Part shown: piece by piece, positions 22,403 to 63,614 of the stretch
How positions within the stretch are numbered: the first letter of the stretch is position 1
Layout: every line of letters begins with the position of its first letter
Source of the DNA: Mizuhopecten yessoensis
Taxonomy: Eukaryota
DNA: 64,000 bases
Direction of reading: 5' to 3'
Assembly: GCF_002113885.1 (NCBI RefSeq)
Contig: NW_018404696.1
Location: forward strand, 284,651-348,650
Notes under the pieces: generated by a model
The model's input: the letters and a program-made list of their open reading frames with translations, nothing else
The model's database searches: none
Told to the model about the DNA's origin: nothing
Made by a program: the position numbers and the translations under genes

Positions 22403-25400
22403 GTATGTGGACGTAGTCTAGACAGCGTCAGGCAAGGCCTCATTCTGTATCAACTCCAAAAAACAAGCCAAAAGTAATGTCGGAAAGAGGGGGAAATCAT
22501 AACTGCATAAATGGGTCAGTTTTCTGTATCTTCCTAGGGTATTATGAATGTTTTTTGTACATAGTTATGTCCTCTTGTAGGTATTTATTTTAAAAAGATA
22601 ATGAACCAGATGTTGGAAGGAAGCTTGAGTTAAGCATTTTGTTTTAATTCTCACTGTTTAAGGAAATGATAGAGTGTGATGCCTTGCCCAGCTGATTTTA
22701 CTTAAGAGCTGATGTGTGTATCTAAACTGTGTGACAATTGCTGCATTACTAACGGTTGTCTCCTTAACATTGAAATCGTAACAAAATTGCTGTGGGTATA
22801 CCTTTTTATACTAAACATGAAAAATCACACAATCTTTTTATCAAGAAATGCCTTTTATTTGTTAATATGATTACACTGAAAACACGACATAAAGATATGA
22901 TAAAGGCACTATCATAAGTGTGATTTCAATAAAGGTTGCCATCGTCTAGTTTACGGCTAGTTATCTCCCTTGTTTTAAAGACGGCGGCAGACATTGGCAG
23001 ATGTTAAATACAGTTTACATACATACATTTTATACTGTGTTTGCTAATAAGAGTTATGTTTATATAGTTGCCCACTTGCTTTGCATGCCTGTTGAGATCA
23101 ATGTCCCGGTACAACAGTACCTACAGCCCATACAAATAAACCCTGCTCCACACTTGGACGGGTTATGGATCAAAATTGTCGATCAGTTTAAGCACATGTC
23201 ACCATTTTGTTTATATTTCCTTTATCATCTTGAACTACGCTCTCATTGAGGCTATCAATGACTGTCTCCTAGTCGTTGGAGTGTTGAGAGAACATGTGTA
23301 TCACTGTTGTAAATCACTTAATATTATCTCAATGACTTTTCACCTCCGCAATTCAAATCCAGTGCTCACTCTTCACCCCATGCTCGTAGTTAAATCTCTA
23401 CAGTAAAAATTCTGTTGTTTTAATTTTCATAAACTGTTGTAGCTTTATTCATTAATATGAAGCTTCTGAACACAGATACAAGTCAATATAAAACTTGTGC
23501 AGTCTTCCTTCGATGCTATAAAAAGCTTTTGAATACAAGATTTACAGTCTATTCCATACCCGTATAAAACATATAGATTTATATTCATCAGAGTGTAAAC
23601 CCTAGCTACATATACCTTGTGTTTGTCGGTTGGCTGAGAAGAAAGGCTGGGTAACACGGGCCGGGGTAAGCCATTGATTTAGGGGCGTAATCAATAACAC
23701 TGACTGACAGAACCTAGGGTGTCGGACGGATTGTATATTGGAACGGCAAACATAAAATGTACACGCTTTTATCTCGCTGATTACGGCTGGCAGCTACCCA
23801 GGTAAATACACATGAGACTCCGCAGACTAGCTGGTTGGTTGGTTTGACCATAAGACAGTTACCTTACCCCGATAGAGAGGCAGGTTTAAGCATGCGATGG
23901 GATTAAATGGTATGGCTTTACAACAATGGGAAAGTTGTTGGGAGTTAAAGGTCTGATTATACTGGTATGTAGTGTATCAGGAGGCCGCATCATCCTTGTT
24001 AAAGCAGTGGCATGGTTATACTAGGGAAATAATGAACCATTCTTGTCTGTGAACAATCTAAAGTAATAGAGATCAGTGTGTGTGGATGACTGGCTGGCTA
24101 GATCTCTACAACACGTTCATTCAGAATTGAGTAAGTATGATCACAACAAACTGAAGTGGTAAATGATAAATGAGCATGTTCTCCTGGCTCTGTCTCTGAC
24201 TTCCCATTATCTCTGAGCTTTAATTTCTATCCAGCCTTACCTGAGCTTTGAATACACGATCAATTCTCCTGTCGACTGATCGTCAGCTGCTGCAGAATTT
24301 ATTTATACACCTTTTGTATTATATCAAGTATCTCACTGTTTATTTACCTCTTTTATTTACCTGCTTTAATCTACTACCTGTTATCTTGTTAGCTCACTAA
24401 CTCTGTCAAGTAGAGGTAAAATCCTCAGCCCTGTGTTTAGGTAGGTCAGATCGTTAAATCTATTATAATTTGGCGGGAAAGGGATTACCAGTAAATTTGA
24501 AACTTGTTCCAACATGTCCAACAAACTTGTATATTGGATCAATACGGAGACAAATAATTCATTTTAGTTTGCTTGAATGCCTGTCAGCTATGGAGGTCTA
24601 CCCTTAGGTACGTTAACGTGAACTGGACAGGTGTATCACAGGGAAAGTCTGTTAGATTTCTCTCCTACTCATGTCAGCAATCTGTGGCCATAACATTGGC
24701 ACTTGGTGTGTAGCACTAGCCTTAAGTAGGTGAGTTACCACTGCCTCTATCCTCTATCATTGCCTATCTGCTTACACTTGTTCCTCTTTCTTCCTTTTCC
24801 TGGTGTGGTTGTAGAAATCTATTTATGGTGACCTGTGTATATTGAGGTAAGTGGTCGTTAAGCATTAAAAAAAAAAAAAAAAAAAATGAAAAAAAAAACC
24901 TAAAATACACATTTTTTCTTTCCCTATGCAGTAAATACCATTGGTGAAACCTTTTTGAATTCCAATGTTTAAATCTTCCTGCACTCGGTGCCTCTTTACG
25001 CAGCATTCCAAATGCAAAGCAAGTCAGCAACTGTCCTAGTACATTAAGATAGAGGTGTAGCTAGCTAGTTGGGGGTATTTTGTGTGATTTGGTAGGGCTC
25101 TGCATCCATGGTGCTTGCTCTGTGTGTTATTCAATGTTATCTTTTCTTCCTTATAACTTTACATCTCATTTATTTACCACTTCCTGTTGACTTTGTTGGA
25201 GGGACAATGAGTAAGATAAAAATAAAGGAATTTTATTTGAAAATATCTATGTTCCATTTTCTTGTCCATTTATATTTTTGACTAATGGCTTGGTAATCAT
25301 AATTTTAATGAAATATTTTGTTGAATGGTTTGGTGCTAATTCTGCTTTTATTGACTGTTTGAGGGTGTCTAAAGTGGACTGACTTTTCAGCGGTTTTTGA

Positions 25401-25465
25401 CACTAATTCCTCCTTTGTTGATTATATAAGATATAATGTCATTCCTCCAATCATCTACCCTGCAG

Positions 25466-27190
25466 AGACGCAAGTGCCGTTCCACACAAACACCAGACCC
25501 ATCTGCCAGGTCATCTGGGCGACGCAGCAATCTCCTTGGATCACGCCACAGTGATGACGACGATGATGATGACGATGGTGATGACAGTGTGTTTAGATAT
25601 CCTCCCTCAGTACGTGGCGGCCGTGGCAGTACGCCCAGTAAACGTAAAATAAGGCGTGGTCTAGGGAGCCAGCCCCACACTCCCCATTCAGCACGTCGCT
25701 CACATAGCAGCAGACCTGATCATGATCTGAAGAAAGGTGGCGCTGCTGCAGGATGTGAGTCAGAGAGCGAAGAGTCTGGATATGGTGAGACGTACTATAC
25801 CATGCATGCTTCGAGTTTTGATACAGTCGACGTTTTTGGTTCTCAGACTTTAGATACAATGAGAGGTACACCCAGCCAGTTGTTGCTAGAAGCTGTGTCG
25901 GACGCCGAGTCCACTGGTAGTTATATAATCGGAGATTTTCCACAAATCAACCCAGATGATCTCCAGGATGCGGCATGTCAGACACCTGCCCATGCCCGCA
26001 CACAGACCCCCAGCAACATGTGGGGCGGTAGCTCGCGTAACATCAGTACACAAGTGCCACGCACCATGCAAACCCAAACTGAAAGTCTGCCACAGAACAC
26101 ATCAATGCAGACATCCAACCTGTCTCTTAACTCTGTCGGTAATCAAACCCGGAGGTCCCTTGGAGGCTCCAGGACAGACTTGTTAAAGAGTATACTAATG
26201 GACGTTAAAACCCTCAAGGCCCAGCGGGGTATTGGCTCAGACACCCCAACAGATGATGCACGGTCTGTAGCCTCTAATGGGAGCCTGCCGCGAGAAATGC
26301 TTCAATCTCTGAGCTCTGATGTACGGACACTAAAACATGCAGGCAGTCATGGAGTTGCTGCCACACAAACTCTCTCAGAGCAGGGAACGCAAACTGGAAT
26401 GAAAATATTTCCAGAAGGTGATCCCGTAAGGAACTCACGTCATGGACGTCTTCGTGATCTTATGTCTGATGTTAAAGACATGAAGGATGGGAATGACACT
26501 CGGTCGCAGCACAGTCTTGACATGCCATACGAGAGGAGCAGACCAATGTCAAGTGTAAGTGGGCTTCGTAACTCCCCCGTACGATTTGCCACTCCTGTTC
26601 CTCCACCTTCAAGACAAAATCGTGCTCTACCACCTCATCCTCCTCAAGAGAATGGGTTTGATAATTATGCACCCCCTGCAGGTTACTACCAGCCTATGCC
26701 AGTGCCAATGCCCAACCAGCCAATGGTAAATCTGAATTCCACAGCCCCAGCCACATTTGGACCGATGCCACACATGAACGGTCATCCTCCATACCCTACA
26801 GGAAGAGTCACCCAGGATGATCTTAATGCGATTAGTGACCGAGTTAATCGCTTACGTAACTACCAGATCCCTCCCCGTCGACAGTTACCTCCTCCTCCAC
26901 CCCCTCAGTATGTTGTGCCAGTGTTCTCAGCCCCACCAAGACGTCGTGTACGCATCCAAGAATTCCCCCAATCTTTCGATGACCAACAGGATGGATTTAT
27001 GTCCGACGAAAGTGAATATGATGGAGGTCGTGCTCCGAGGAGGAGGGGTCATGGGAGAGGTCATGGAGTACAGGATCGCTATGGACTAGATGGAGTACTC
27101 TCTGAGGCCAGTGAGGCCGCACGAGAACTCAAAATTCTTTCAAAGAAAATGAGAGATTCTCTTAGAGATGAACTCCTTAACGGTCCGTAA
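25466..27190 (+). CDS. Putative alternative terminal exon: 574-aa disordered Ser/Pro/Arg-rich tail with multiple TQT/QT motifs and a C-terminal amphipathic helix
   Basis: 1.75-kb non-repetitive ORF, GC-richer than its flanks; strong acceptor tcattcctccaatcatctaccctgcag|AGA in phase 0, matching the exon O donor; ends TAA at 27188-27190. Coding status is well supported; linkage to nesprin is inferred. Confidence 0.75.
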   Translation, partial: RRKCRSTQTPDPSARSSGRRSNLLGSRHSDDDDDDDDGDDSVFRYPPSVRGGRGSTPSKRKIRRGLGSQPHTPHSARRSHSSRPDHDLKKGGAAAGCESESEESGYGETYYTMHASSFDTVDVFGSQTLDTMRGTPSQLLLEAVSDAESTGSYIIGDFPQINPDDLQDAACQTPAHARTQTPSNMWGGSSRNISTQVPRTMQTQTESLPQNTSMQTSNLSLNSVGNQTRRSLGGSRTDLLKSILMDVKTLKAQRGIGSDTPTDDARSVASNGSLPREMLQSLSSDVRTLKHAGSHGVAATQTLSEQGTQTGMKIFPEGDPVRNSRHGRLRDLMSDVKDMKDGNDTRSQHSLDMPYERSRPMSSVSGLRNSPVRFATPVPPPSRQNRALPPHPPQENGFDNYAPPAGYYQPMPVPMPNQPMVNLNSTAPATFGPMPHMNGHPPYPTGRVTQDDLNAISDRVNRLRNYQIPPRRQLPPPPPPQYVVPVFSAPPRRRVRIQEFPQSFDDQQDGFMSDESEYDGGRAPRRRGHGRGHGVQDRYGLDGVLSEASEAARELKILSKKMRDSLRDELLNGP

Positions 27191-28002
27191 TACAAAATGT
27201 GTCTTGGCTCTCATCCAAGATTATTCCCCCAATCTTGTGATGTTGAACCACTTCATGTTTAGGAACCAAACTTTTACACAAAATGTATGATTTCCCACAT
27301 ATTTGACCATGAGTGTTTGTTGAGTCTGTAAACCATTCCTATAGGATGTACTTTTTTACTTAAATATTTAAATGATAATGAAATCATTTCTAACAACGAT
27401 TATAGATGTATTATACAATAGTTTTCAAGAGAAGGTAATCTTATATAATTTTTAATAAATTTAATGTGTTTTTCGTCCTATTTTTCAAAGTGAACTGTGA
27501 TACCTATTCCACTGTACGCAACAGTTGTGTGAAATACTGTCCAACATAATGTGTATGTGAATGTCAAAATATTTTCATATCATAAGACTTTTATACCAAT
27601 ACAGGTATTTGTTTTTCCACAAGACGCTTATTTTGTACTAGAAAAAACATTGTTCACAGGGTTTTGTGAGAAAACCTCATTGATATCAGTCTCTAACATA
27701 ACAATAGAAGGGAATGAATCCTTTATGTAATTTCGTTTAAAAGGGTTGGTCATTGAGAAAGCCGAAAGGACCCTTTAAATTGTATGCCATGCTTAGTCTG
27801 CTATAGCACACTATATACATTAATTGTGATCACGTCATTTTTACAAGCCTAATGTCATATTTACCATTATGTTTTGAGAAGGTTTGAATTTTATTCTTCA
27901 ATCAACAATTCTTTTTCTTCATTTTTTTCTTTTGTGAAAATATGATTGATTTTGATAAGATTTTAGATATGTGTATTTGATATGAAGGGTGTTTGTGTGA
28001 TA

Positions 28003-28105
28003 CTGTGCTGGTGTTACATTGCCGTGGCTAAACCTTCATGGCTACACAGGTTTTGTGCTGGTGTTACATTGCAGTGGCTAAACCTTCATGGCTACACAGG
28101 TTTTC
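28003..28105. repeat. About 51-bp tandem duplication
   Basis: tgtgctggtgttacattgc(c/a)gtggctaaaccttcatggctacacaggtttt x2. Confidence 0.9.
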
Positions 28106-28357
28106 TAGTGGGATTTATTTTTTAAATTCATTGTTAACACTACAACTGTTGAGATGCAAAATAAAAGTTGTGTAGTCTGTTTTAAAATTCAATGATGTGT
28201 CAACTGAAAACTTGAACACCACTGTAGACCATAATGGGGTGAAAGGGTTAAGTGTAGCTTATTATGTTTTGGTGATTACTATAATTGGTAAGGAAAACTA
28301 GTGTGGTTACTGTTTCTTACTTGGCAGTTTAGCTAGTTTAATTTGGTGAAATGTTTG

Positions 28358-28590
28358 GTTCCAACTTTGTGGTGTAGCCATATTCTCATTCTGTGATACA
28401 TCTGTTTCCAACTTTGTGGTGTAGCCATATTCTCATTCTGTGATATATTTGTTTCCAACTTTGTGGTGTAGCCATATCCTCATTCTGTGATATATCTGTT
28501 TCCAACTTTGTGGTGTAGCCATATTCTCATTCTGTGATATATTTGTTTCCAACTTTATGGTGTAGCCATATCCTAACTCTGTGATATATT
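28358..28590. repeat. 47-bp minisatellite x5
   Basis: ttccaactttgtggtgtagccatattctcattctgtgatatat... repeated. Confidence 0.92.
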
Positions 28591-30465
28591 TTATTCCTAC
28601 TCGTTGATTAAGCCATATTGTAATTGATCATCACATTCTGTGATAGTGTTTTTAACTGTCCTTTTAGGTGCTTGTTCTAATTTTATTGTTTCACATTGCA
28701 AAGAAGAATAAATTTTTATACTATTTTTATCAAATTCAAAGAAAGGTTATAAAGCTCGAAAACTTAACTTTCTTGATGGTTGTTGATTGTCATTTATATT
28801 TTATCAAATATTTTAAATGATCCAATAGAATCCTGAGAAGACACTGTCTGGTGACACTGACCTCTGACCTCCAGTTGATAGGATATTTAGTCAGTTTGAT
28901 CAAGCCGTGGATCTTGAAAGATCAATATATGGTGGAGTTGTTTTTGTCAGCAGGGTTAAAGATATACATGTACGTTAACATTGAATTCCTATTGGCTAGT
29001 TTGTATAGGGTGTAGTCGTAGTGGTGGACAGAAACACGTAGGTCACCTGATCACTTAGGGTTTTTTGTGATGTTAATTATTTTTATGTGATAACAGTATT
29101 TATTTGTTTACAAACAAGATCTGAATTTATATTTATCAAAAGGCTATTGTTTTTAAGTTGTTTTAACTTGATAACTTAAACTATACAAGTATTTTTTATT
29201 GAGCATTTTAAAACCCTGCTATGGTTTATGAATTTTAATGAATAGCATTGCATTAAGGATATTTACACTTCCTACAGATCAGCCTTTATTGTTTTTCCAT
29301 TGTATTTTTATAACCTTACCCGTACTGGTTATATAAAGGACATTTCTGGCTGCCAGGATAGCTTTATATCAAATGTATGTGCCCTGAGGTTTATTATTTC
29401 ACTGCCATTTCTGTCCAACAGGTTCTGTGAAGCCGTCATTAGGCTGCAGTGTTAATGATAGATCATTATGTAATTATTGATAGTGTTAGGTTTATAATCA
29501 AACAAAAACACAGCCCACAGCTTTAGATATTGGCCAGATATTAACCCGCCATTGCTGGTAGCTGGTAGGTAAATGTCATCAACCTTTTGATGATTGGGCA
29601 GAACTGTCAGTGTGGAGGATATCAGGGTTTTGTTTAAATGGATCTTACTGATGGGTCATGTAGAAACGATTGTGTATTTATTGTATTTTTCCAGTAAGAT
29701 GTAATATTCTGTAGCTGTCACTGTAGTGAATGCTAGTTCTGTGACACACATGTCATCAATGAATGTAACATTGTTCTTATGAACAGGTGTATATTTGTGT
29801 ATTGAAGTTGAAAGGGTGTTTAGAATTGTCATAAATGTTTTGGTAAGAGGACTTTTTTGGAGTCAGTTAGAGATGTTTTATATTAAAAAATAGATCTTTT
29901 GGAGAGTAAATGTATTAATGCGTTCCTGTAGTTACAACTCAGAAACTGTAGTTATTTAATAGCAAAAAAATAACCATTTTGATTGTGTATTACTAATTTA
30001 TTATTTATTCATTTCTGTGATTATATACATCATTCCAAACTCCTAGGCATAGAAATGCTTGATTTTTTTCAAATATGTTTTTACAAGGTGATTTCAACAT
30101 CCAATAAGTAAAGGCTGTTTGATATTTACATTCTAGAGAATAACTTCACATTTATTTATCCTGCCTGTAATCATATATGTGTATTTCAGTTACAAATATA
30201 TCCTAGATATATTTAGAATTTTTCATAAATTAAAAAGAAATCTTATTTATTGTGTCAGATAGATGTTAAGCTATAATGAACAGTTTTGGTTATTGTGTCA
30301 GATGATATTTGTGCCTTTAACTGAATGCCTTTACAAGTTATTTTCACTAAGCAGCTGTTAGTTTACCTAACCATATCTATCTATATAAATTCCGTCCTTA
30401 CTGGGTACTAGTTGTCTGGGGCAGTTTGTGTCTGCCTGTGAACAGTGTTAGGAAAGATTGTTATG

Positions 30466-30530
30466 AATAAAAAAGATATTATCAAGTTTTGAAGTGCTTT
30501 GTCTTTATTAAGAGTGACTTGTGTCTTTTG
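30466..30530 (+). terminator. Candidate polyadenylation signal
   Basis: AATAAA at 30466-30471 followed about 20-60 nt later by GU/U-rich gtgctttgtcttt...ttgtgtcttttgt. Confidence 0.45.
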
Positions 30531-31133
30531 TAGAAATCTATCAACCAGCCAGTTATCCAATCAGATCACTATACATATAGCTACTTTCTCTCTATAAACT
30601 GCAATATATTCACCCTTACTTATTTATATTCTGGCCATTTCAAATATAATCAAATGGTAACGATTCTACGATTTTAAATTGTATAAATGTTCATAGATAA
30701 AAACAAATTCATGTTTGAATTGCACTGCAATTCAAGAGCAAATGGGGACAAAAAGTTGCCTGTTTTACAATAATCATGTGAGCATTACCAGCCAATCAGC
30801 TAGCCAGCCAATCAGGTATCTAGCATTCCTCTGTGGATGTCTAAAAGTATGTTTTATCCTGCCTTGGTTTCACAATCATATTGATATCTATGAATTGTAA
30901 TTAATTGTGAACTGATATTTTTTCGATAAGATTGTGAAATTATGGCATGACAACAAGCCTATGAATTGATCAGACGAAGAGATATATTTCAAGAAACCGA
31001 TGTTGTAGTTGAGCCTTTGTCACAACACTGCTGAACAAAGTACTACAACAGTAAGTGACTTTATTTGTCACTGGACACAATCTCCGTGGATCTACCTGAC
31101 GTAGTGATTCATATCCATAACCATGTCCTGTCT

Positions 31134-32667: not shown

Positions 32668-32984
32668 AGATTAAATTCTCAGGCTAGTTTTTTTTAATGT
32701 TTGCATGACATGAACCAACTTCAAAGTTAGTATGACAGAAAGTTATAGGAAGTTAATAGTCACCTGTATGAACATTTTTTTCGACGTGAACCTTTGAAAT
32801 TGTTTTTGGATTTCATTGCATCAAAGATTTTGTGAATTGATTCACAAAACAGTTTCTGCAAAGTACAAACTTTGTTATAAAATTAATAGATTAATACAAT
32901 GGAACCATATCATTATATTTGCTTTGTATAGTAAAAAAATGGCTACACGCTTCATATGTTTACACCTCTCAGTTTACATCAAAG

Positions 32985-34888
32985 TATCATATCTCACATC
33001 ATATCTTATGCATCAAATCTCACATCATATCTTATACATCAAATCTCACAGCATATCTTATGCATCAAATCTCACATCATATCTTATACATCAAATCTCA
33101 CAGCATATCTTATGCATCAAATCTCACAGCATAACTTATACATTAAATCTTACATTATATCTTATACATTAAATCTTACATCATATCTTATACATTAAAT
33201 CTCCCATTACAATTATATATCTCAGTTTACATCAATTAAAGTATATCTCACAGCATATCTTATGCATCAAATCTCACAGCATATCTTATGTATCAAATCT
33301 CACAGCATATCTTATGCATCAAATCTCACATCATATCTTATACATTAAATCTCCCATTACAATTATATATCTCAGTTTCCACCAATTAAAGTATATCTCA
33401 CAGCATATCTTATGCATCGAATATCACAGCATATATTATACATCAAGTCTCACAGCATATCTTATGCATCGAATATCACAGCATATCTTATACCTCAAAT
33501 CTCACAGCATAACTTATACATTAAATCTTACATCATATCTTATACAGTAAATCTCCCATTACAATTATATATCTCAGTTTACATCAATTAAAGTATATCT
33601 CACAGCATATCTTAAACATCAAATCTCACAGCGTATCTTATGCATCAAATATCACAGCATATCTTATACATCAAATCTCACAGCATATCTTATGCATCAA
33701 ATATCACAGCATATATTATACATCAAATCTCACAGCATATCTTATACATCAAATCTCACAGCATATCTGATACGTCAAATCTCACAGCATATCTTATACA
33801 TCAAATCTCACAGCATATCTTATACATCAAATCTCACAGCATATCTTATACATCAAATCTCACAGCATATCTTATACATCAAATCTCACAGCATATCTTA
33901 TACATCAAATCTCACAGCATATCTTATACATCAAATCTCACAGCATATCTTATACATCAAATCTCACAGCATATCTTATACATCAAATCTCACAGCATAT
34001 CTTATACATCAAATCTCACAGCATATCTTATACATCAAATCTCACAGCATATCTTATACATCAAATCTCACAGCATATCTTATACATCAAATCTCACAGC
34101 ATATCTTATACATCAAATCTCACAGCATATCTTATACATCAAATCTCACAGCATATCTTATACATCAAATCTCACAGCATATCTTATACATCAGATCTCA
34201 CAGCATATCTTATATACATCAGATCTCACAGCATATCTTATATACATCAGATCTCACAGCATATCTTATATACATCAGATCTCACAGTATATCTTATATA
34301 CATCAGATCTCACAGTATATCTGATATACATCAGATCTCACAGTATATCCTATACATCAGATCTCACAGCATATCTTATACATCAGATCTCACAGCATAT
34401 CTTATATACATCAGATCTCACAGCATATCTGATATACATCAGATCTCACAGTATATCTTCTATACATCAGATCTCACAGCATATCTTATACATCAGATCT
34501 CACAGCATATCTTATATACATCAGATCTCACAGCATATCTGATATACATCAGATCTCACAGTATATCTTATATACATCAGATCTCACAGCATATCTTATA
34601 CATCAGATCTCACAGCATATCTTATATACATCAGATCTCACAGCATATCTTATATACATCAGATCTCACAGCATATCTTATATACATCAGATCTCACAGC
34701 ATATCTGATATACATCAGATCTCACAGTATATCTTATATACATCAGATCTCACAGCATATCTTATACATCAGATCTCACAGCATATCTTATATACATCAG
34801 ATCTCACAGCATATCTTATATACATCAGATCTCACAGCATATCTTATATACATCAGATCTCACAGCATATCTGATATACATCAGATCT
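32985..34888. repeat. 26-bp minisatellite (CATCAAATCTCACAGCATATCTTATA)n grading into a 28-bp variant
   Basis: Unit changes to CATCAGATCTCACAGCATATCTTATATA after about 34190. Confidence 0.97.
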
Positions 34889-35282
34889 CCCGTTACAATC
34901 TCTCAGCTGCCTCAAGAATAACAGGGAAATCAAAGGTTGATTTGATATTGTTCCGTATTTGATCAAACTGATTTGGCAATATCAAATATGGTTTTCACAT
35001 AGAAAATGATAAAACGATGGATTTCACATAGAAAATAATAAAAATGTGTGTTAAAATGTTGCTGCAATTATTTATTTTCCATCACAACCATCCTATTTTT
35101 TAGTTTGCACACACTAACATTATCTAGGTCCAGCACGAATCTAATCTAACAAAATTCACATGTGTTTGTACAGTATCATGTATCAGGGTGTATACTTAGT
35201 GTGGAATTAACTACAAACAGTTGACATTGTTATTGAACAGAATATGTGATCACCCACTTTTTGAAAATGAAACTTTAAGCAA

Positions 35283-36525
35283 GGGTCTGTACAAGGCTAC
35301 TCTAGACCTGTTGCTGACGGGTACAATCTTCTGTCAGGTGACTGTACCAGATCAGGCTACTCTCGACCTGTTGCTGACAGGTACAATCTTCTGTCAGGTG
35401 ACTGTACCAGATCAGGCTACTCTAGACCTGTTGCTGACAGGTACAATCTTCTGTCAGAGTCTGTACAAGGCTACTCTAGACCTGTTGCTGACGGGTACAA
35501 TCTTCTGTCAGGTGACTGTACCAGATCAGGCTACTCTCGACCTGTTGCTGACAGGTACAATCTTCTGTCAGGTGACTGTACCAGATCAGGCTACTCTAGA
35601 CCTGTTGCTGACAGGTACAATCTTCTGTCAGAGTCTGTACAAGGCTACTCTAGACCTGTTGCTGACAGGTACAATCTTCTGTCAGAGTCTGTACCAGGCT
35701 ACTCTAGACCTGTTGCTGACAGGTACAATCTTCTGTCAGAGTCTGTACCAGGCTACTCTAGACCTGTTGCTGACAGGTACAATCTTCTGTCAGAGTCTGT
35801 ACCAGGCTACTCTAGACCTGTTGCTGACAGGTACAATCTTCTGTCAGAGTCTGTACCAGGCTACTCTAGACCTGTTGCTGACAGGTACAATCTTCTGTCA
35901 GAGTCTGTACCAGGCTACTCTAGACCTGTTGCTGACAGGTACAATCTTCTGTCAGAGTCTGTACCAGGCTACTCTAGACCTGTTGCTGACAGGTACAATC
36001 TTCTGTCAGAGTCTGTACCAGGCTACTCTAGACCTGTTGCTGACAGGTACAATCTTCTGTCAGAGTCTGTACCAGGCTACTCTAGACCTGTTGCTGACAG
36101 GTACAATCTTCTGTCAGAGTCTGTACCAGGCTACTCTAGACCTGTTGCTGACAGGTACAATCTTCTGTCAGGGTCTGTACCAGGCTACTCTAGACCTGTT
36201 GCTGACAGGTACAATCTTCTGTCAGGGGTCTGTACCAGGATACTCTAGACCTATGTTGCTGACAGGTACAATCTTCTGTCAGGGGTCTGTACCAGGCTAC
36301 TCTAGACCTGTTGCTGACAGGTACAATCTCCTGTCAGTGGTCTGTACCAGGCTAATCTAGACCTGTTGATGACAGGTACAATCTTCTGTCAGGGGTCTGT
36401 ACCAGGCTAATCTAGACCTGTTGCTGACAGGTACAATCTTCTGTCCGGGATCTGTACCAGATCAGGCTACTCTAAACGGGTTGCTGACAGGTACAGTCTC
36501 CTGTCAGGGGTCTGTACCAGATCGG
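35283..36525. repeat. 54-bp (with 60-bp variants) minisatellite containing a CTGACAG...CTGTCAG inverted repeat
   Basis: (CTGTACCAGGCTACTCTAGACCTGTTGCTGACAGGTACAATCTTCTGTCAGAGT)n. Confidence 0.97.
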
Positions 36526-38364: not shown

Positions 38365-39200
38365 TATGTATAAATATATATATATATAGATACAGAATAT
38401 ATATATATAGATAGAGAATGTATAATAAATGTATATATATAATAAATGTATAGAATATATATATATATATTTACAGAATATATAATGAATGTACATATAG
38501 ATACAGAATATAGTCCGCCTGAAGAAGCCCTAGAACTTAGAAGGCAGAAAGGCCTAAGAGGCGATCTGAAAAAATTATGTTTTTATTCTATATTTTCCTT
38601 CGCAAGGACTTAATTATNNNNNNNNNNNNNNNNNNNNNNNNNNNNNNNNNNNNNNNNNNNNNNNNNNNNNNNNNNNNNNNNNNNNNNNNNNNNNNNNNNN
38701 NNNNNNNNNNNNNNNNNNNNNNNNNNNNNNNNNNNNNNNNNNNNNNNNNNNNNNNNNNNNNNNNNNNNNNTATAGATACAGAATATATAATAAATGTACA
38801 TATAGGCACAGAATATATAATAAATGTATGTTTAGGTACAGAATATATATAAAATATATATTAAGGTACAAAATATATAAATAATGTATATTTAGGTACA
38901 GAATACATAAAAATTGTATATTTAAGTATGAAATATATAATAAAAGTATGTTTAGATACAAAATAAATAATAATTGTATATTTAGGTACGGAATATATTT
39001 AAAATTTATACTAAGGTATATAATATATAATAAACGTATAATAAGGTACAGAATATATAATATATGTATATTTAGGTACAGAATATATATTATATGTATA
39101 TTTAGGTACAGAATATATATTATATGTATATTTAGGAACAAAATATATAATAAATGTATATTTAGGAACAGAAGATGTAGGTAAATATTGTGTATAGGTA
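38365..39200. repeat. AT-rich minisatellite of about 30 bp (TATTTAGGTACAGAATATATAATAAATGTA)n spanning an assembly gap
   Basis: Degenerate copies on both sides of the N run. Confidence 0.8.
38618..38770. other. Assembly gap (153 N)
   Basis: Run of n characters. Confidence 0.99.
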
Positions 39201-51350: not shown

Positions 51351-51437
51351 ATGGGAAACACAGTAACTCACTGTGGAGGGAAAAGGTCCAAGAAAAGGAA
51401 GAAGAAAGATACTAAACAGAACAACAATGAGAAAAAG
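51351..51437 (+). CDS. Putative alternative first coding exon, MGNTVTHCGGKRSKKRKKKDTKQNNNEKK (myristoylation/palmitoylation/polybasic signal)
   Basis: Kozak ataATGG; 29 codons; AAG|gtaaat phase-0 donor compatible with the acceptor at 63615; M-G-x-x-x-T consensus, Cys8, KRSKKRKKK. Confidence 0.62.
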
Positions 51438-51512: not shown

Positions 51513-51625
51513 GCTGACTGTGGACATTGATACTTTCAGTACGGCTGCTGACTGTGGACATTGATACTTTCAGTACGGCTGCTGACTGTGGACATTGATA
51601 TTTTCAGTACGGCTGCTGACTATGT
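51513..51625. repeat. 34-bp tandem repeat, about 3.3 copies
   Basis: gctgactgtggacattgatactttcagtacggct. Confidence 0.9.
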
Positions 51626-53403: not shown

Positions 53404-53521
53404 TTGGTGGTGATGATATAGTGTTAAGTCGTTGGTGGTGATGATATAGTGTTAAGTCGTTGGTGGTGATGATATAATGTTAAGTCGTTGGTGGTGATGA
53501 TATAGTGTTAAGTCGTTGGTG
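53404..53521. repeat. 28-bp tandem repeat x4
   Basis: ttggtggtgatgatatagtgttaagtcg. Confidence 0.92.
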
Positions 53522-56500: not shown

Positions 56501-56735
56501 GATGGTATGATGGGGGACAGGCCAGACATGAAACCCCAAGGAATTCCTCTCTCCCTTGATTGTATAAGTGTAATAGCAACAGCAGTAAACTAGTGTCAAT
56601 TTGAGGTTCAAGAGATATTGGACCTAGGGCTTGTACCAACATATATAGAGCACAGAATTCTCTATAAATCAAGGCTTATCAACCTTTGTATGACTGGTCC
56701 AACTTTGCGTTTAATTGATAAACATTGTATAGATA

Positions 56736-57670
56736 CAGAATGATTTCAGTGTCCTAGAGGTCTATAGAATGATTTCAGTGTACTAGAGTTCGATAGGATG
56801 ATTTCAGTGTCCTAGAGGTCTATAGGATGATTTCAGTGCCCTAGAGGTCTATAGAATGATTTCAGTGCCCTAGAGGTCTATAAAATGATTTCAGTGTCCT
56901 AAAGGTCTATAGAATGATTTCAGTGCCCTAGAGGTCTATAGAATGATTTCAGTGTCCTAGAGGTCTATAGGATGATTTCAGTGTCCTAGAGGTCTATAGA
57001 ATGATTTCAGTGCCCTAGAGGTCTATAGAATGATTTCAGTGCCCTAGAGGTCTATAGAATGATTTCAGTGTCCTAGAGGTCTATAGAATGATTTCAGTGT
57101 CCTAGAGGTCTATAGAATGATTTCAGTGCCCTAGAGGTCTATAGAATGATTTCAGTGCCCTAGAGGTCTATAGAATGATTTCAGTGTCCTAGAGGTCTAT
57201 AGAATGATTTCAGTGTCCTAGAGGTCTATAGAATGATTTCAGTGCCCTAGAGGTCTATAGAATGATTTCAGTGCCGTAGAGGTTTATAGAATGATTTCAG
57301 TGTCCTAGAGGTCTATAGGATGATTTCAGTGTCCTAGAGGTTATATAGAATGATTTCAGTGCCCTAGAAGTCTAGAGAATGATTTCAGTGCCCTAGAGGT
57401 CTAGAGAATGATTGCAGTGTCCTAGGGGTCTAGAGAATGATTTCAGTGCCCTAGAGGTCTATAGAATGATTTCAGTGTCCTAGAGGTCTATAGAATGATT
57501 TCAGTGCCCTAGAGGTCTAGAGAATGATTTCAGTGCCCTAGAGGTCTAGAGAATGATTTCAGTGCCCTAGAGGTCTAGAGAATGATTTCAGTGTCCTAGA
57601 GGTCTATAGAATAATTTCAGTGCCCTAGGGGTCTAGAGAATTATTTCAGTGCCCTAGAGGTCTAGAGAAT
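56736..57670. repeat. 29-bp minisatellite (AGAATGATTTCAGTG(T/C)CCTAGAGGTCTAT)n
   Basis: About 32 copies. Confidence 0.97.
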
Positions 57671-60134
57671 GTTTTTTTCCCTTTTCTATTAAACACTGCA
57701 ATCGGTGTACATATGAACAATGTAAGAACAGTTTAACTTTATGAAGTTTTGCCTTTTGGTTTGAAAAACATTTTTCTAAATTGTGAAACGTTAATTGCAA
57801 CAAGGTCATCAAGAAGTAACGAAGGTCAGTGGCATAGGACTTAAAATGTCTGAAAGCAGAGGAGATTGATCTTTTACAATTTCAACAAGCTATAAAGTAC
57901 TGATGGAAATACTCAGCCGTAATTTAACGTCTGTTGAGCTATTTTGATTCGGTTAGTTTAAATCAACTTCAGTTATGAGTAAATAATCCAAAACTATGAT
58001 AACAAAGGAAATCAAATATTTAAGGAAATATGAGGAATGTGGTTAAGTTTTACCGGTGGAGTATATAGACAGGGATAAGGGGCAGTGAGATTATCACAGG
58101 AGATTTACACACGTCTCACTGGTTCTACTCTTAAAAACAGGTTTATCAATGGGAAGTATTCACCTCGTATCGGGGAAAAACAATATCCTAAGTACAAGTA
58201 AATCTTTCATATCTAATTGTTCCTTAAATCCAACCTGATAGCTACTAATATACACAAGGAGCTTATTAATCAGAGACGGGTGTTGGCATTAATCCAGCAT
58301 TATTGTACAGTTTTCTGTGGTGCTGGTTGATAGAGACAGTCTGGTCAGCTTGGAATAGTTGTAATAGAAATAGGTACCTAGGTTTGAAACTGTTAAAGGA
58401 ATTATACATGAGGATTCAAAATATCCCTGAGGCAGCAGCATAGAAAATGTTCCTATTTTCTTTAAGATTGAAAACAAAACAAAAACTTCTTGGTGGTTGA
58501 GACACCATGTTCAGTATTGAAGGTGAAGCAATTTGATTCCAGTTAAACGTACTGGTAGACAGACTGGTAAGACGCCATAACAATATATCTATACACTATT
58601 GTGTTATATGTTCTTAGACTGTAATATAGTTTATACAAGAAAACAAATCTCACGGAAAATGTATTTGACTAAGCAAAATAAATGTAAAATGTCTATCACA
58701 ACAGTGTCATTGAAATCCTGTGGTGGTGTTGTCCTTATGGTGTCACTTTCTCTATTACAGCAGTGTTGTGAACATTCTATCTTGTGTGGAAATGTCACTT
58801 TAAGATTAAATTTTCATTTACTTCATAAACAAACCCTGAGTATGGAGACATCATGTCCATTTGTTTATCCTTTTGCTGACCGCCCAAATGTGTGAAGTTT
58901 AAATATACATTTTACGTAACTGACCTCCATCAGTGTTCAGGCCAATTTTTCTGGTCAAGCTTTAATTTATACCTATAGTTTTTATTGACTGACCACATTC
59001 CGTAGTATTTGAGTGAATTCCCTGGCCCCTATACTACACACTGATATAGGTAAGCCTCTGTATTGTACCCACTGTGGCTCTGAAGACTAAGCACTTCTCC
59101 TTATGCGATTATTTCTTATATTTGAATTTAAACAAACAAATCCATTGTGGTCAGATTGAAAAGAAAAAATATGAAATGAATACTTCACTGAGCTGGTTTT
59201 TCAGTCCTATCCTTAGAGATCAGCAGTTACCAGTACTCTGTGTATACAGTGCAGTGGTGATTTCACCAAACTTTGTCAAGTTAGGTGAGGATTGAAGATG
59301 GGCATGATATATAGATATTACTAAGTTAGAGACATTTTTTATGTTCCTCAAAGCACGGAACATCAATGCCACAAGTTAACCTGGTCGGAAGCTGTAAGTG
59401 TAGTGTACCATGTAAATTCTACTACTGACACCACCAACGACAAATCAGAAACATCCCCTTGAGCAGGTTTCCCCCCTCAGCCTTCATGTAAGGTTGATCA
59501 AATGTAAGTCCTATGGCCATGGGATCTACCTCTTACGATGACTGGCTCCGAGTAATCTGATCTTCTCAGTTCTATAGGAAACTGTTTTAAGCTAAAAATG
59601 TTTGCATCATTATTTATATTTGATAAATCATTGAAATAGTAAGTACATGTTGTTGGATTAGTTCAACTGAATCATAAATGTTATTCTTATACATATTGAT
59701 GTAGAGGAATTTAACGCGAGCCGTATAATTAAATAATGTACTGCTGCTTCGCTAAAGTCGACTAATATATGTATGTAGAATGTTGAAGAAATGTGCATCA
59801 GGGTTTCAATAAAGATAGTGAATTCATGTATAAAATTGTATCCGGAGGCATGCTACCCAGGTATTGGTGTAACTTGTCTGAGTGGGTGGATATTGATTGC
59901 AGTAGATGTACCTGTAATGTATCATTAATTAAAATGTAATACTTATCTGAGAACTCCATCGGTGAACAGCTAATAGACTGAAAGGATCATAGCAGCCAGG
60001 AACTAACATGCTGTGTATTAATTAAGTCGCACTAAGGAGGTTTGACATATCAATATCTTATTGATTATGCAGGAAAAAAATCTATAGTTTCTTAAAATTT
60101 GTGATGCAACATTCTTACAACAAAATACAGGTAC

Positions 60135-61203
60135 ACAATGTTTTCTCAACAGGGGAATCAAACCATAAATTTTCTACAGGGACATCAAACCATATATTAT
60201 CTACAGGGACATCAAACCATATATTATCTACAAGGGAATAAAACAATGTTTTCTCAACAGGGGAATCGAACAATGTATTATCTACAGGGACATTAACAAT
60301 GTATTCTCTACAGGGACATCAAACAATGTATTATCTACCGGGACATCAAACAATGTATTATCAACAGGGACATCAAACAATGTATTGTCTACAGGGACAT
60401 CAAACAATGTACTATCTACAGGGACATCAAACAATGTATTTACTACAGGGAAAGCAAACAATGTATTTTCTACAGGGGCATCAAACAATGTATTCTCTAC
60501 AGGGACTTCAAACATTGTATTATTGACAGGGACATCAAACAATGTATTTACTACAGGGAAAGCAAACAATGTATTTTCTACAGGGACATCAATCAATGTA
60601 TTTTCTACAGGGAAATCAAACAATGTATTTTCTACAGAGAAATCAAACAATGTATTTTCTACAGAGAAATCAAACAATGTATTTTCTACAGGGGCATCAA
60701 ACAATGTATTCTCTACAGGAACATCAAACAATGTATTATCCACAGGGACATCAAACAATGTATTCTCTACGGGGACATTAAACAATGTATTCTCTACGGG
60801 GACATTAAACAATGTATTCTCTACAGGGAAATTAAACAATGTATTCTCTACAGGAACATCAAACAATGTATTATCCACAGGGACATCAAACAATGTATTT
60901 TCTACAGAGAAATCAAACAATGTATTTTCTACACGGAAATCAACCAATGTATTCTCTACAGGGACATCAAACAATTTATTCTCTACAGGGACATCAAACA
61001 ATTTATTCTCTACAGGGACATCAAACAATTTATTCTCTACAGGGACATCAAACAATGTATTCTCTACAGGGACATCAATCAATGTATTTTCTACAGGGAA
61101 ATCAAACAATGTATTATCTACAGGGAAATCAAACAATGTATTTTCTACAGGGACATCAATCAATGTATTATCTACAGGGACATTAAACAATGTATTCTCT
61201 ACA
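60135..61203. repeat. 27-bp minisatellite (CTACAGGGACATCAAACAATGTATTCT)n
   Basis: About 39 copies; accounts for ORFs 60282-61394. Confidence 0.96.
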
Positions 61204-61402
61204 GATAAACTTATGTTATATATCACAGATAAACTTATGTGATATATCACAGATGAACTTATGTGATATATCACAGATAAACTTATGTTATATATCACAG
61301 ATAAACTTATGTGATATATCACAGATAAACTTAAGTTATATATCACAGATAAACTTATGTTATATATCACAGATAAACTTATGTTATATATCACAGATAA
61401 AC
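61200..61402. repeat. 24-bp minisatellite (TCACAGATAAACTTATGTTATATA)n fused to the preceding array
   Basis: About 8 copies; the junction shares ACAG. Confidence 0.94.
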
Positions 61403-61964
61403 CTTGGTAATATTCGTAGATTCCCAGCTATTATAAATCCATGACTGACTTTAGCTTCCGACCCTAATGAATATTCATGATGTAAAATAAATCAACCAAG
61501 TTCCTTTGTATGGGATTATGAGATATTGATGATTCTAACAATATTTCTGGTTCACCTGGTATGTATACACCTGTATGTTATTACATTGAGTAGGTATCTG
61601 TTTGTGTCTGTGTACTGGACAATTGATCAATTTATACTGGTCGCTAGGACCAGGTATACCTTATGTAACAGTGTTTCATTGAGTCTCCATGTTAAGTTTA
61701 CCTATATATTCCTCATGATGATGTTCTGACAGTTATATCAGCCCTTAATTTGTAATACCTGTAATACAAACATGTCACGTACGTGTCACCCCACCACTAA
61801 CCCTGTAACATCAACATGTCCCCCCACCTTAGCTCATTCGAATTCATACCTGAACTTTCATAATGAACTATTCCAACCTTTGAATTGGAGGAATTCAAAA
61901 GTATCTTCAGGGGTAAATGAGTTCACCTATCACATCAATATGTCCCCCTGCATTTATATATATA

Positions 61965-62345
61965 TATACCCTGTAACATCATCATGTCACCCTGAGTTAA
62001 CCCTGTAACATCATCATGTCGCCCTGAGTTAACCCTGTAACATCGACATGCCCTCTACATTAACCCTGTAACATCGACATGCCCCCTATGTTTACCCTGT
62101 AACATCGACATGCCCCCTATGTTTACCCTGTAACATCGCCGTGCCCTCTACATTAACCCTGTAACATGGCCGTGCCCTCTACATTAACCCTGTAACATCG
62201 CCGTGCCCTCTACATTAACCCTGTAACATCGCCGTGGCCTCTACATCAACCCTGTAACATCGACATGCCCCCTATGTTTACCCTGTAACATCGACATGCC
62301 CCCTATGTTTACCCTGTAACATCGACATGCCCCCTATATTAACTA
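61965..62345. repeat. 31-bp minisatellite (ACCCTGTAACATCGACATGCCCCCTATGTTT)n
   Basis: About 12 copies. Confidence 0.93.
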
Positions 62346-63397
62346 TGTTGTATTGTAAAGTGTACTGTAGTTACACAAATGGGTTGGTTCACTACTTAAT
62401 TAATTCACTATTTATAGGATGTAAGATAAAGGTAGACATTAGATAATATCACACTCTGGGGATCCATTGAGCATGAAATTAGCGTGTTGTCCCTCAATCA
62501 AAGGTCAAGTAGGTCGCTGGGGTGGTATATATCTCAATTAAACGGCTCCACTGTAACACTGACAGGTAATCGTTGACAGCCATGCCTCACAAGCTTAATG
62601 TATTCCACATACCTCTTCATGTTTCTAGATTACAACCCAATGGTATCATTTCAGAGTCAGGTACCCCGCTATTAAAAGGCTGTAGGTGCCTGATTTCCTG
62701 TTTGGCTCTATCTGTTGGAGTAGTAACCTGACAATGGATGCCCATTCACCTGTGTCAAACTCACAAATTGGCTGTCACTGCTCACCTGTAGCTGTGTAAA
62801 CAAGGAAATAAAATCTATTTGTGGTTTCTCAGTTTGATTAATAACATTGTATTGAGACTTCAATGTTATATCTACCTGTTTCAATATGCTATCTATCGAG
62901 TTTGATTTGAAAATTTCTTACCTAAATGTACCTGGCTTGCCTTTGTACGTTGAAATCCATTGGTGAGGCGTACCTATATACCAGTATGTTTGAACTTGAT
63001 AACGACTTTCTTACGCTCATTTTAGAACCTATCTGATTTCAATTTCATTCCAAACAAGTCACTTCCATTGCTGTACCTCTCATTCTACTGCTTTATAAAG
63101 TTAATAAATGACTCACTTTTGAGTTTATTTCTTTTTCTGTCTTATTGAAGGTATTGTGTTGTTCTGCCTTTCTGTCTTTTTGAAGGTATTGAGTTGTTCT
63201 GTCGTTCTGTCTTATTGTGTTTATGTGTTCCACGAGTCATTGAGGGTGTAACATAACAGAAAGATATTACCATATCTCCAGCTGCTAAATTGCCTGTGAG
63301 GATTTTCATTGGTTTGAATCAATTGACATTGCCTGAATAACATACAGCATAGATTTCCGACCTCCTGTACATTGATTGTCATAGATACATTGTCAGG

Positions 63398-63520
63398 GGA
63401 GGGGGCTCCTGTAGATACATGGGGTCAGGGGTCAGAGGTGATCAGGGATCCTCTACCTGGAGGGGGCTCCTGTAGATACATGGGGTCAGGGGTCAGAGGT
63501 GATCAGGGATCCTCTACCTA
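63398..63520. repeat. About 61-bp tandem duplication
   Basis: gggggctcctgtagatacatggggtcaggggtcagaggtgatcagggatcctctacct x2. Confidence 0.9.
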
Positions 63521-63614
63521 CCAAGTCCTCTGACAATAAGCAATACTAAAAGATTATGTAGAAAATTGTCTCATTCATAATTGTTATTACATTACATGTG
63601 TTTTATTTTTTTAG

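What the first reader, a model, noticed from the sequence alone, without database searches (positions are those of the whole stretch)
22403..63614. One 41-kb intron may split a giant nesprin into two differently anchored half-proteins
Seen: the other introns here are 0.14-7.2 kb; this one is 41.2 kb and interrupts a spectrin repeat in phase 0. It contains, in the required order, a phase-0 terminal exon with stop and poly(A) signals (25466-30490) and then an ATG-bearing exon with a phase-0 donor (51351-51437). Established: nesprin-1/Msp300 proteins have N-terminal CH actin-binding domains and a C-terminal KASH anchor, and use alternative starts and ends. Inference: three products. (1) Full length. 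(2) An N-terminal, KASH-less half capped by an LC8-binding disordered tail. (3) A C-terminal half that swaps the actin-binding head for a lipid anchor, which could tether a cellular membrane directly to the nuclear envelope. I do not know of this combination having been described, but cannot search to confirm.
Basis: partly seen in the sequence, partly recalled or inferred. Interest (0 to 1): 0.9.

Follow-up and report, generated by a model that had tools for sequence, protein, structure and literature searches.

The report
Nesprin intron hiding two alternative exons
A roughly 41-kb intron in a mollusc nesprin gene holds two exons that are conserved in other molluscs, one ending the protein early with a disordered tail full of LC8-type motifs and one starting it late with a lipid-anchor-like peptide, so one gene probably makes differently anchored proteins, as vertebrate and fly nesprin genes do.

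Summary
The sequence features are real. The donor at 22402|GT, the acceptor AG|63615, the tail exon (25466-27190) and the ATG exon (51351-51437) are all in phase 0.

**Tail exon.** It encodes 574 mostly disordered residues with five TQT motifs (0.13 expected). Detectable homologues come from molluscs, where their source is named. It sits after the same spectrin exon in three other assemblies. Four protein entries from other molluscs (three named models, one UniParc fragment) and one cDNA-like oyster contig join it to that exon.

**ATG exon.** An independent gap-free bivalve contig keeps the order spectrin exon, tail exon, ATG exon, next exon across about 40 kb. Its ATG exon is also 29 codons, starts Met-Gly with S/T at position 6, has a Cys-Gly pair, a polybasic run and a phase-0 donor. 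The flanking DNA does not align.

**Limits.**
- The poly(A) signals occur at background frequency.
- The assembly gap lies in a minisatellite and touches no exon.
- CH and KASH domains lie outside the window.
- No transcript of this species was available.
- The tail may also belong to a short isoform.

**Prior work.** Alternative starts and ends are known for nesprins, and a potential N-myristoylation site was predicted on a human KASH-bearing variant. I rate this a new variant of a known kind.

The parts
22097..22402 (+). Last spectrin-repeat exon before the large intron (102 codons, both ends in phase 0)
   Evidence: It is 77% identical to Mytilus coruscus 'SYNE1' P0002 and collinear with P0026, P0028 and P0044. 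Its donor position is conserved in about 20 mollusc genomic ORFs, which all read Val (GT) straight after the last codon.
22403..63614 (+). Large intron, 41.2 kb as assembled (length approximate because of the gap)
   Evidence: Donor and acceptor were read directly. About 13.7 kb is minisatellite arrays. The corresponding intron in bivalve contig ctg5015 is about 40.0 kb.
25466..27190 (+). Alternative terminal exon, coding part: 574 codons plus stop. It encodes a disordered tail.
   Evidence: The acceptor is CAG| in phase 0. There is no Pfam match. There are 29 and 23 homologues; those whose source is named are molluscs. Synteny holds in L001, L002 and L006. In the AlphaFold model 416 of 574 residues have pLDDT below 50.
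25484..25492 (+). TQT motif 1 (C-R-S-T-Q-T-P), at the very start of the tail
   Evidence: C4, T7, Q8 and T9 are nearly invariant across 11 mollusc sequences.
26000..26008 (+). TQT motif 2 (R-T-Q-T-P)
   Evidence: Q180 is invariant and T181 nearly invariant.
26072..26080 (+). TQT motif 3 (M-Q-T-Q-T)
   Evidence: Q204 and T205 are nearly invariant.
26363..26395 (+). Twin TQT motifs 4 and 5 (A-T-Q-T-L-S-E-Q-G-T-Q-T)
   Evidence: T300, Q301, T302, Q309 and T310 are invariant in all 11 sequences.
27083..27178 (+). Conserved C-terminal amphipathic helix of the tail (residues 540-571)
   Evidence: The 10-residue blocks covering the helix have mean pLDDT of 76-91. L545, A548, L555, K556, M562 and L566 are invariant.
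27191..30490 (+). Proposed 3'UTR of the terminal exon; its end is not verified
   Evidence: AATAAA occurs at 27454, 28160, 28707 and 30466, which is the background rate. Nothing here is conserved with ctg5015.
38618..38770 (.). Assembly gap (153 N) inside the intron
   Evidence: The same AT-rich minisatellite lies on both sides and no exon is near. I did not fill it.
51351..51437 (+). Alternative first coding exon: 29 codons with a Met-Gly start, Thr6, Cys8-Gly9, a polybasic run and a phase-0 donor
   Evidence: There is an in-frame stop three codons upstream. It is the only polybasic ORF meeting the myristoylation consensus in 128 kb. Its homologue in ctg5015 (L009 18653-18739) has the same length and phase, also has an upstream stop, and the peptide similarity beats composition-preserving shuffles.
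63615..63733 (+). Next exon: 119 nt, acceptor in phase 0, donor GTTAGT
   Evidence: It is the top codon-usage candidate. A 119-nt homologue with the same boundaries lies 13.45 kb after the ATG exon in ctg5015 (44% identity, E 1.6e-8).

Best explanation
The window carries part of a mollusc nesprin (SYNE-like) gene. The intron after exon 22097-22402 is a conserved place where isoforms are chosen.

(a) Splicing 22402 to 25466 ends the protein with a 574-residue, mostly disordered tail and drops everything downstream. That gives a KASH-less isoform if, as in other nesprins, KASH is at the far C-terminus. The tail carries five conserved TQT sites. I infer that these bind LC8 dimers, which would pair two tails side by side and stiffen them, helped by a conserved C-terminal helix.

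(b) Transcription starting inside the intron yields a first coding exon (51351-51437) spliced to 63615. Its peptide starts Met-Gly with Thr at position 6, followed by Cys-Gly and a Lys/Arg run. This is the pattern of N-myristoylated proteins that bind membranes through lipid plus charge. It would give the actin-head-less C-terminal part a membrane anchor.

(c) Skipping both exons (22402 to 63615) gives the long form.

Shown: the exons, their phases, and their conservation and synteny. Inferred: use of the junctions in this species, LC8 binding, lipid modification, and the presence of CH domains upstream and KASH downstream.
For: - Nesprin identity: Pfam Spectrin_SYNE1 hits on upstream exons, and source names SYNE1 and nesprin-1-like on homologues.
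- Tail junction: P0002, P0026, P0028 and P0044 all read ...QLK/VQ followed by R-x-C-R-S-T-Q-T-P. The oyster Logan contig L005 joins the two exons without an intron, whereas a closely related oyster genomic ORF (P0059) reads into an intron at that point.
- Tail acceptor: the AG is conserved, but the upstream ATG is not (CTG in L001, TTG in L003).
- Tail synteny: it follows the same exon in L001, L002 and L006.
- TQT motifs: 5 observed against 0.13 expected, with 2-6 per homologue (4-6 in eight of nine) at aligned positions.
- Disorder: shown by the structure prediction.
- ATG exon: contig ctg5015 has a 29-codon homologue, with a phase-0 donor and an upstream in-frame stop. It lies 18.2 kb after the tail exon and 13.45 kb before the 119-nt homologue of 63615-63733.
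- ATG exon peptide similarity: shuffle p below 5e-5, or 4.5e-4 with Met-Gly held fixed.
- Flanking DNA does not align, so the conservation is at the protein level.
Against: - No transcript of the window's own species could be found.
- L005 has a one-base shortfall (A6 where A7 is needed) exactly at the junction. It also has another A-run frameshift and an unexplained 5' end, so it is suggestive only.
- All the long homologues are database entries of unknown evidence, mostly gene predictions.
- The ATG exon is confirmed in only one other species. It is short, A-rich and of low complexity.
- Three models start just before the 18576 exon, so the tail may cap a short isoform rather than an N-terminal half.
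- CH and KASH domains are outside the window.
- The 40-residue query from 63615 found nothing in the protein database.
Confidence: 0.6

Rival explanations
1. The tail exon belongs mainly to a short isoform of about 870 residues that starts from an internal promoter in the 7.2-kb intron before exon 18576. It would comprise about two spectrin repeats plus the tail. It does not cap a CH-bearing N-terminal half. This reading is not exclusive of the main explanation.
For: Three independent models (Mytilus coruscus P0002, Plakobranchus P0026, oyster P0028) all begin immediately before the equivalent of exon 18576 and end with the tail. No protein longer than 878 residues carrying the tail appeared among 1.84 billion representatives.
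Against: P0044 continues upstream into the equivalent of exon 11168-11344. The N-termini of the three models are unrelated to one another. That of P0002 ends ...SVSFK, which reads like a translated polypyrimidine tract plus AG, so these starts may be artefacts of gene predictors that had to begin a new gene. No Met-Gly or basic ATG exon with a phase-0 donor lies in 11400-18575 of the window.
Confidence: 0.3
2. The 29-codon ATG exon is real and conserved, but it is not a lipid anchor on a KASH protein. Its Lys/Arg run could be a nuclear localisation signal. Alternatively the exon could be spliced elsewhere, or the downstream part could lack KASH.
For: K-R-S-K-K-R-K-K-K also fits a classical basic nuclear localisation pattern (own knowledge). 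No junction evidence exists, and KASH is not in the window.
Against: Gly2, Ser/Thr6 and the Cys-Gly pair are kept in both species alongside the basic run. The next conserved exon downstream has a phase-0 acceptor in both species. It is the only good exon candidate in the window.
Confidence: 0.2
3. The ATG exon is a chance ORF in A-rich intron DNA, and its match in the other species is a low-complexity coincidence.
For: There are 42 ATGs with phase-0 donors in this part of the intron. Lys-rich ORFs arise easily from A-rich DNA. The feature was picked out after the fact. tblastx with low-complexity masking did not report the match.
Against: In a species whose introns do not align, the homologue has the same 29-codon length, the same phase, an upstream stop, the same strand and the same place between the same two exons. 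The shuffle p-value is 4.5e-4 even with Met-Gly fixed. ORFs meeting the myristoylation consensus are rare: 2 per 128 kb in the window and 3 in the 31.7-kb interval of ctg5015, of which only this one is basic.
Confidence: 0.1
4. The tail ORF is an independent single-exon gene nested in the intron, starting at the ATG at 25436.
For: An in-frame ATG lies 10 codons upstream of the acceptor. ORF callers report stand-alone proteins of about 500 residues in many genomes.
Against: That ATG is not conserved (CTG in L001, TTG in L003), and the upstream peptides differ. The polypyrimidine tract and the AG are conserved. Four protein entries and L005 splice the tail to the spectrin exon.
Confidence: 0.05
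5. The arrangement is an assembly artefact: the sequence on the two sides of the gap at 38618-38770 was joined wrongly.
For: The gap length is only estimated and the gap lies in a minisatellite.
Against: A gap-free contig of another bivalve (0 N in 44 kb) has the same order, strand and similar spacing of all four exons.
Confidence: 0.03

Closest known systems
Human nesprin-1/nesprin-2 variant system (Rajgor et al. 2012, PMC3388047)
   Same: One giant spectrin-repeat gene uses many internal start and termination sites. These give KASH-less, CH-less and rod-only variants with unique end peptides.
   Different: Here both the alternative end and the alternative start sit in a single intron. The end peptide is a 574-residue tail whose source-named homologues are all molluscs, not a short intron-derived peptide. 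Nothing is validated at the RNA level.
Human p931KASH-Nesp1 variant with a predicted N-myristoylation site (PMC3388047)
   Same: It is a KASH-bearing, CH-less nesprin whose unique N-terminus was noted to contain a potential N-myristoylation site.
   Different: In the passage I read, the human site is only an ELM motif prediction. Here Met-Gly, Ser/Thr6, Cys-Gly and the polybasic run are conserved between two bivalves. Homology between the human and mollusc exons was not tested.
Drosophila Msp300 isoforms (Morton et al., PMC11230431)
   Same: An invertebrate nesprin gene with at least eleven isoforms, including a KASH-less one with few spectrin repeats and a derived function.
   Different: The unique parts show no detected sequence relationship. 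None of the 23 database hits to the tail is named as anything but a mollusc protein.
Multivalent LC8 clients: ASCIZ, GKAP, KANK1 linker L2 (PMC5963919, PMC12797016, PMC12803091)
   Same: Long disordered regions with several TQT-type sites that LC8 dimers bind, so that two chains pair into a ladder or rod (abstracts).
   Different: LC8 binding of the mollusc tail is untested. No paper in the searchable library links nesprin with LC8 and TQT.
Myristoyl plus polybasic membrane anchors (Src, MARCKS type; own knowledge)
   Same: Met-Gly-x-x-x-Ser/Thr followed by a Lys/Arg cluster, and here a nearby Cys that could be palmitoylated.
   Different: No modification was shown. The Cys is at position 8 or 10 rather than position 3.

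Membership tests
Nesprin / SYNE giant KASH proteins | Tandem spectrin repeats of the nesprin type | tested here: met
   Pfam PF25034 Spectrin_SYNE1 hits four upstream exons. The ORF at 9460-9873 scores 42.8 bits against a cut-off of 35; the other exons fall below the cut-off on their own. Homologues are named SYNE1 or nesprin-1-like by their sources.
Nesprin / SYNE giant KASH proteins | C-terminal KASH domain | not testable with these tools
   The window ends at 64000, one exon after the intron. No downstream sequence was available.
Nesprin / SYNE giant KASH proteins | N-terminal paired CH actin-binding domains (giant isoform) | not testable with these tools
   The window starts inside the spectrin-repeat region.
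Alternative 3' terminal exon | Acceptor in frame with the upstream exon, own stop codon, conserved position | tested here: met
Alternative 3' terminal exon | Transcripts using the junction, and a functional poly(A) site | tested here: inconclusive
   Oyster contig L005 joins the exons but has a one-base shortfall in an A-run at the junction. AATAAA occurs at background frequency.
Alternative first exon | ATG after an in-frame stop, donor phase matching the next exon, conserved in an orthologous locus | tested here: met
Alternative first exon | Promoter or transcription start upstream, and the junction to 63615 in RNA | not testable with these tools
   No RNA data were available for this species. 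No non-coding sequence is conserved upstream.
N-myristoylated proteins | Met-Gly start fitting G-{EDRKHPFYW}-x(2)-[STAGCN]-{P} | tested here: met
   The window peptide starts M-G-N-T-V-T-H and the ctg5015 peptide starts M-G-A-T-A-S-A.
N-myristoylated proteins | Actual lipid attachment by N-myristoyltransferase | not testable with these tools
   This needs a labelling experiment.
LC8 (DYNLL) clients | TQT anchor motifs in a disordered segment, conserved | tested here: met
   Five TQT sites against 0.13 expected, at aligned and partly invariant positions. All five lie in segments with pLDDT below 50.
LC8 (DYNLL) clients | Physical binding to LC8 | not testable with these tools
   This needs a pull-down or calorimetry experiment.

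The most novel reading that the evidence does not exclude
Mollusc nesprin genes keep two products encoded in one ~40-kb intron. One is a KASH-less form whose five-site TQT tail is paired by LC8. The other is an N-myristoylated, polybasic, KASH-bearing form. Being fixed at both ends, the second would tie a cellular membrane directly to the outer nuclear membrane without using actin.
Probability: 0.3. Interest if true: 0.7.

Novelty: new variant of a known kind. Interest (0 to 1): 0.55.

Why it matters
Nesprins link the nucleus to the cytoskeleton. How their many isoforms are anchored decides what the nucleus is tied to.

If the Met-Gly/polybasic exon is used and a KASH domain lies downstream, the protein would be a direct membrane-to-nucleus tether. 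That idea was previously raised only as a motif prediction for one human variant. Here it becomes testable because the key residues are conserved between two bivalves.

The multi-TQT tail would add nesprin to the clients of the LC8 hub. I found no paper reporting that link.

On the practical side, ORF callers and gene predictors split this locus into separate proteins. The result shows how those pieces belong together.

Tried and rejected
- **Pfam on the tail, the ATG exon and the 63615 exon:** no match.
- **phmmer of the 63615 exon against the window's own spectrin exons:** nothing significant.
- **Database search with the 40-residue 63615 exon:** no candidate. This says little because of the length filter.
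- **Search with exon 22097-22402 for short fragments spanning the next junction:** 19 of 20 hits are genomic ORFs that read into the intron. Only P0070/L005 crosses to the tail, and none shows the skipping junction.
- **Contig look-ups for P0002 and P0044:** not on record.
- **The 10 kb downstream of the tail exon in L002, L003, L006, L007 and L008:** no ATG exon and no next exon. These were found only by walking 32 kb along ctg5015.
- **The Met-Gly/basic start of P0002 as a second example of a lipid-anchored isoform:** rejected as evidence, because its end looks like a translated acceptor region.
- **Poly(A) signals:** rejected as evidence.
- **Nested-gene and misassembly readings:** rejected.
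- **Dispersed-repeat origin of the ATG exon region:** no other copy in the window.
- **Joined-exon searches:** All searches were exon by exon, by reference.
- **Human sequence:** no contig looked human.


Full report
**What the window is.** The + strand carries a run of spectrin-repeat exons. Four of them hit Pfam PF25034 (Nesprin-1 spectrin repeats); the ORF at 9460-9873 scores 42.8 bits, above the 35-bit cut-off. The closest named proteins are Mytilus coruscus 'SYNE1' and Plakobranchus 'nesprin-1-like'. This is part of a mollusc nesprin gene. The best tail matches are only 50-60% identical, so the species itself is poorly represented in the databases.

**The observation.**
- The donor (CTAAAG|GTATGT after 22402) and the acceptor (T-rich tract, AG before 63615) are as stated.
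- The tail exon starts at 25466 after a polypyrimidine tract and CAG. It runs in phase 0 to a stop at 27188-27190.
- The ATG exon 51351-51437 has 29 codons, an in-frame TAA three codons upstream and an AAG|GTAAAT donor in phase 0.
- Refined boundaries: the upstream exon is 22097-22402 and the downstream exon is 63615-63733 (119 nt).
- The 7.2-kb intron (11345-18575) and a 163-nt intron are confirmed.
- About 13.7 kb of the large intron is minisatellite arrays.

**The gap.** Positions 38618-38770 lie between copies of one AT-rich 30-bp minisatellite. No exon or reading frame comes near it, so it affects only the intron's length. I did not fill it or look its letters up. A gap-free contig of another bivalve shows the same order and orientation of the exons on either side.

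**What is weak in the observation.** AATAAA is no more frequent after the stop than in the rest of the intron (1.2 against 1.09 per kb). The 3' end at 30490 is therefore a guess. An ATG exon with a phase-0 donor is not rare in itself; there are 42 candidate ATGs in 27191-63614.

**The tail exon.**
- Its 574 residues have no Pfam family.
- A full HMMER scan of 1.84 billion representatives found 23 relatives of 67-679 residues. Only one of those looked up carries an organism name, the land snail Candidula. A word-indexed search found 29 relatives. Those with source names are molluscs: Mytilus, Dreissena, Magallana and Plakobranchus.
- In genomic contigs the tail ORF lies directly downstream of the equivalent of exon 22097-22402. 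The intervening intron is about 1.85 kb in L001, 8.9 kb in L002 and 6.7 kb in L006.
- The DNA just upstream keeps the pyrimidine tract and the AG. The in-frame ATG of the window is CTG in L001 and TTG in L003. The ORF is therefore entered by splicing, not by initiation.
- Four protein entries (P0002, P0026, P0028, P0044) read ...QLK or ...VQ followed directly by R-x-C-R-S-T-Q-T-P.
- The oyster Logan contig L005 joins the same two exons with no intron, whereas the genomic ORF of a closely related oyster (P0059) reads straight into an intron. L005 has six A where seven are needed for the frame. It also has a second A-run frameshift and an odd 5' end, so I treat it as suggestive cDNA evidence only.

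**What the tail looks like.**
- AlphaFold with an 11-sequence alignment gives mean pLDDT 47.6, with 416 of 574 residues below 50. There are a few helices, the best at 450-465 and 540-571.
- It has five TQT triplets against 0.13 expected from composition. Homologues have 2-6 (4-6 in eight of nine) at aligned positions. The twin A-T-Q-T...G-T-Q-T pair is invariant in all 11 sequences, and the opening C-R-S-T-Q-T is nearly invariant.
- TQT in a disordered chain is the anchor of LC8-binding motifs, and several sites in a row are typical of LC8 clients such as ASCIZ, GKAP and KANK1. The opening motif resembles the K-S-T-Q-T site of Bim (own knowledge).
- I infer that LC8 dimers pair two tails. This is not shown. 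No paper in the searchable library links nesprin with LC8 and TQT.

**The ATG exon.**
- Within the window it is one of only two ORFs on either strand that start Met-Gly, fit the N-myristoylation consensus and end at a phase-0 donor. It is the only one rich in Lys/Arg (11 of 29).
- It is the second-best codon-usage candidate in the intron, but with a modest score.
- It is not part of a dispersed repeat.
- The decisive test was comparative. I walked 32 kb along contig ena:ERZ25069866:ctg5015 (loci L006, L009, L010, L011). On the same strand, 18.2 kb after the tail exon, I found an ORF reading MGATASALNCGSKRKDKKKKSEKDKNSNQ followed by GTGTGG. It is again exactly 29 codons, with a phase-0 donor and an in-frame stop five codons upstream.
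- Compared with MGNTVTHCGGKRSKKRKKKDTKQNNNEKK in the window, Gly2, Thr4, Ser/Thr6, the Cys-Gly pair and the basic run are kept.
- The alignment score is never reached in 20,000 composition-preserving shuffles. With Met-Gly held fixed it is reached in 0.045% of shuffles.
- The surrounding DNA does not align at all. The similarity is therefore maintained at the protein level.

**The next exon.**
- In the window, 63615-63733 is by far the best exon candidate in 27191-64000 (32 bits).
- In ctg5015 a homologue (44% identity, E 1.6e-8) lies 13.45 kb after the ATG exon. It has the same 119-nt length, a TTTCAG| acceptor in phase 0 and a GTAATG donor.
- The whole intron there is about 40.0 kb, against 41.2 kb here. 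The order spectrin exon, tail exon, ATG exon, next exon is shared.
- A translated comparison of the two loci shows no other conserved island.

**What remains open.**
- No RNA from this species was available, so no junction is shown directly.
- Three models (P0002, P0026, P0028) start just before the equivalent of exon 18576. The tail may therefore cap a short isoform of about 870 residues rather than, or as well as, a CH-bearing N-terminal half.
- P0044 extends one exon further upstream. The three model N-termini look like predictor artefacts; P0002's ends in what reads as a translated acceptor.
- CH and KASH domains are outside the window.
- The basic run could also act as a nuclear localisation signal.
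Continuity of the spectrin repeat across 22402/63615 is therefore not tested.
- No contig looked human.

**Comparison with what is known.**
- Human nesprin-1 and nesprin-2 use many internal start and termination sites. These give KASH-less, CH-less and rod-only variants with unique end peptides. The same paper notes a potential N-myristoylation site at the N-terminus of the KASH-bearing p931KASH-Nesp1 variant (PMC3388047).
- Drosophila Msp300 has at least eleven isoforms, including a KASH-less one with few repeats (PMC11230431).
- The principle, and even the lipid-anchor idea, are therefore not new.
- What appears new is threefold. First, a long multi-TQT tail, seen so far only in molluscs, serves as the alternative end. 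Second, the Met-Gly/Cys/polybasic start exon is conserved. Third, both sit in one conserved ~40-kb intron.

**Verdict.** This is a new variant of a known kind, of moderate interest.

Noticed in passing
L006 675-1904 (+); its end is also at L002 1-92: A 409-codon ORF lies about 550 nt upstream of the equivalent of exon 21112-21288, inside the nesprin gene of another bivalve. It starts M-G-Q-N-Q-G-K followed by a long Lys-rich run. It has no Pfam family. The last ~30 residues are 72% identical in L002. The window has no counterpart; its intron at that place is only 163 nt. It could be another Met-Gly/polybasic alternative first exon or a nested gene.
   Followed up: partly
P0002 residues 1-38 (Mytilus coruscus 'SYNE1'): This model starts M-G-N-K-S-S with a basic run, like the window's ATG exon, but is joined to the equivalent of exon 18576. 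Its last residues (S-V-S-F-K) read like a translated pyrimidine tract plus AG, so the start may be a prediction artefact.
   Followed up: partly
L005 1-1060 (Logan SRR4183539): This oyster contig joins the spectrin exon to the tail. It has two frameshifts in A-runs, lacks 12 nt (residues D-P-V-V) relative to K1QUR5, and has an unrelated 5' end of about 135 nt.
   Followed up: partly
window 26138-26230, 26291-26347, 26423-26488 (tail residues 225-255, 276-294, 320-341): Three predicted helices share the pattern L-x-x-[IL]-x-x-D-V-[KR]-x-[LM]-K. They lie within about 80 residues of the TQT sites, the third about 10 residues after the twin pair. This suggests an internally repeated module in the tail.
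   Followed up: partly
window 2881-4599 and 31136-63519 (many arrays): There are very many minisatellite arrays with periods of 16-61 bp. They create long spurious ORFs on both strands, for example 2902-4602, 33640-34542, 35221-36360 and 60282-61394.
   Followed up: partly
window 12307: A single N lies inside the 7.2-kb intron.
   Followed up: no
P0061 and P0072 (relatives of exon 22097-22402): In some species the equivalent exon is split by an extra intron after ...E-Q-A-L-Q. P0061 is the closest relative of the window found for this exon (89% identity over 61% of the query).
   Followed up: no
L002 13416-17030 (-); L003 1172-2221 (-): In other bivalves the corresponding introns hold a LINE-type ORF (reverse transcriptase plus endonuclease, downstream of the tail exon in L002) and a mariner-type transposase (upstream of it in L003).
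   Followed up: no
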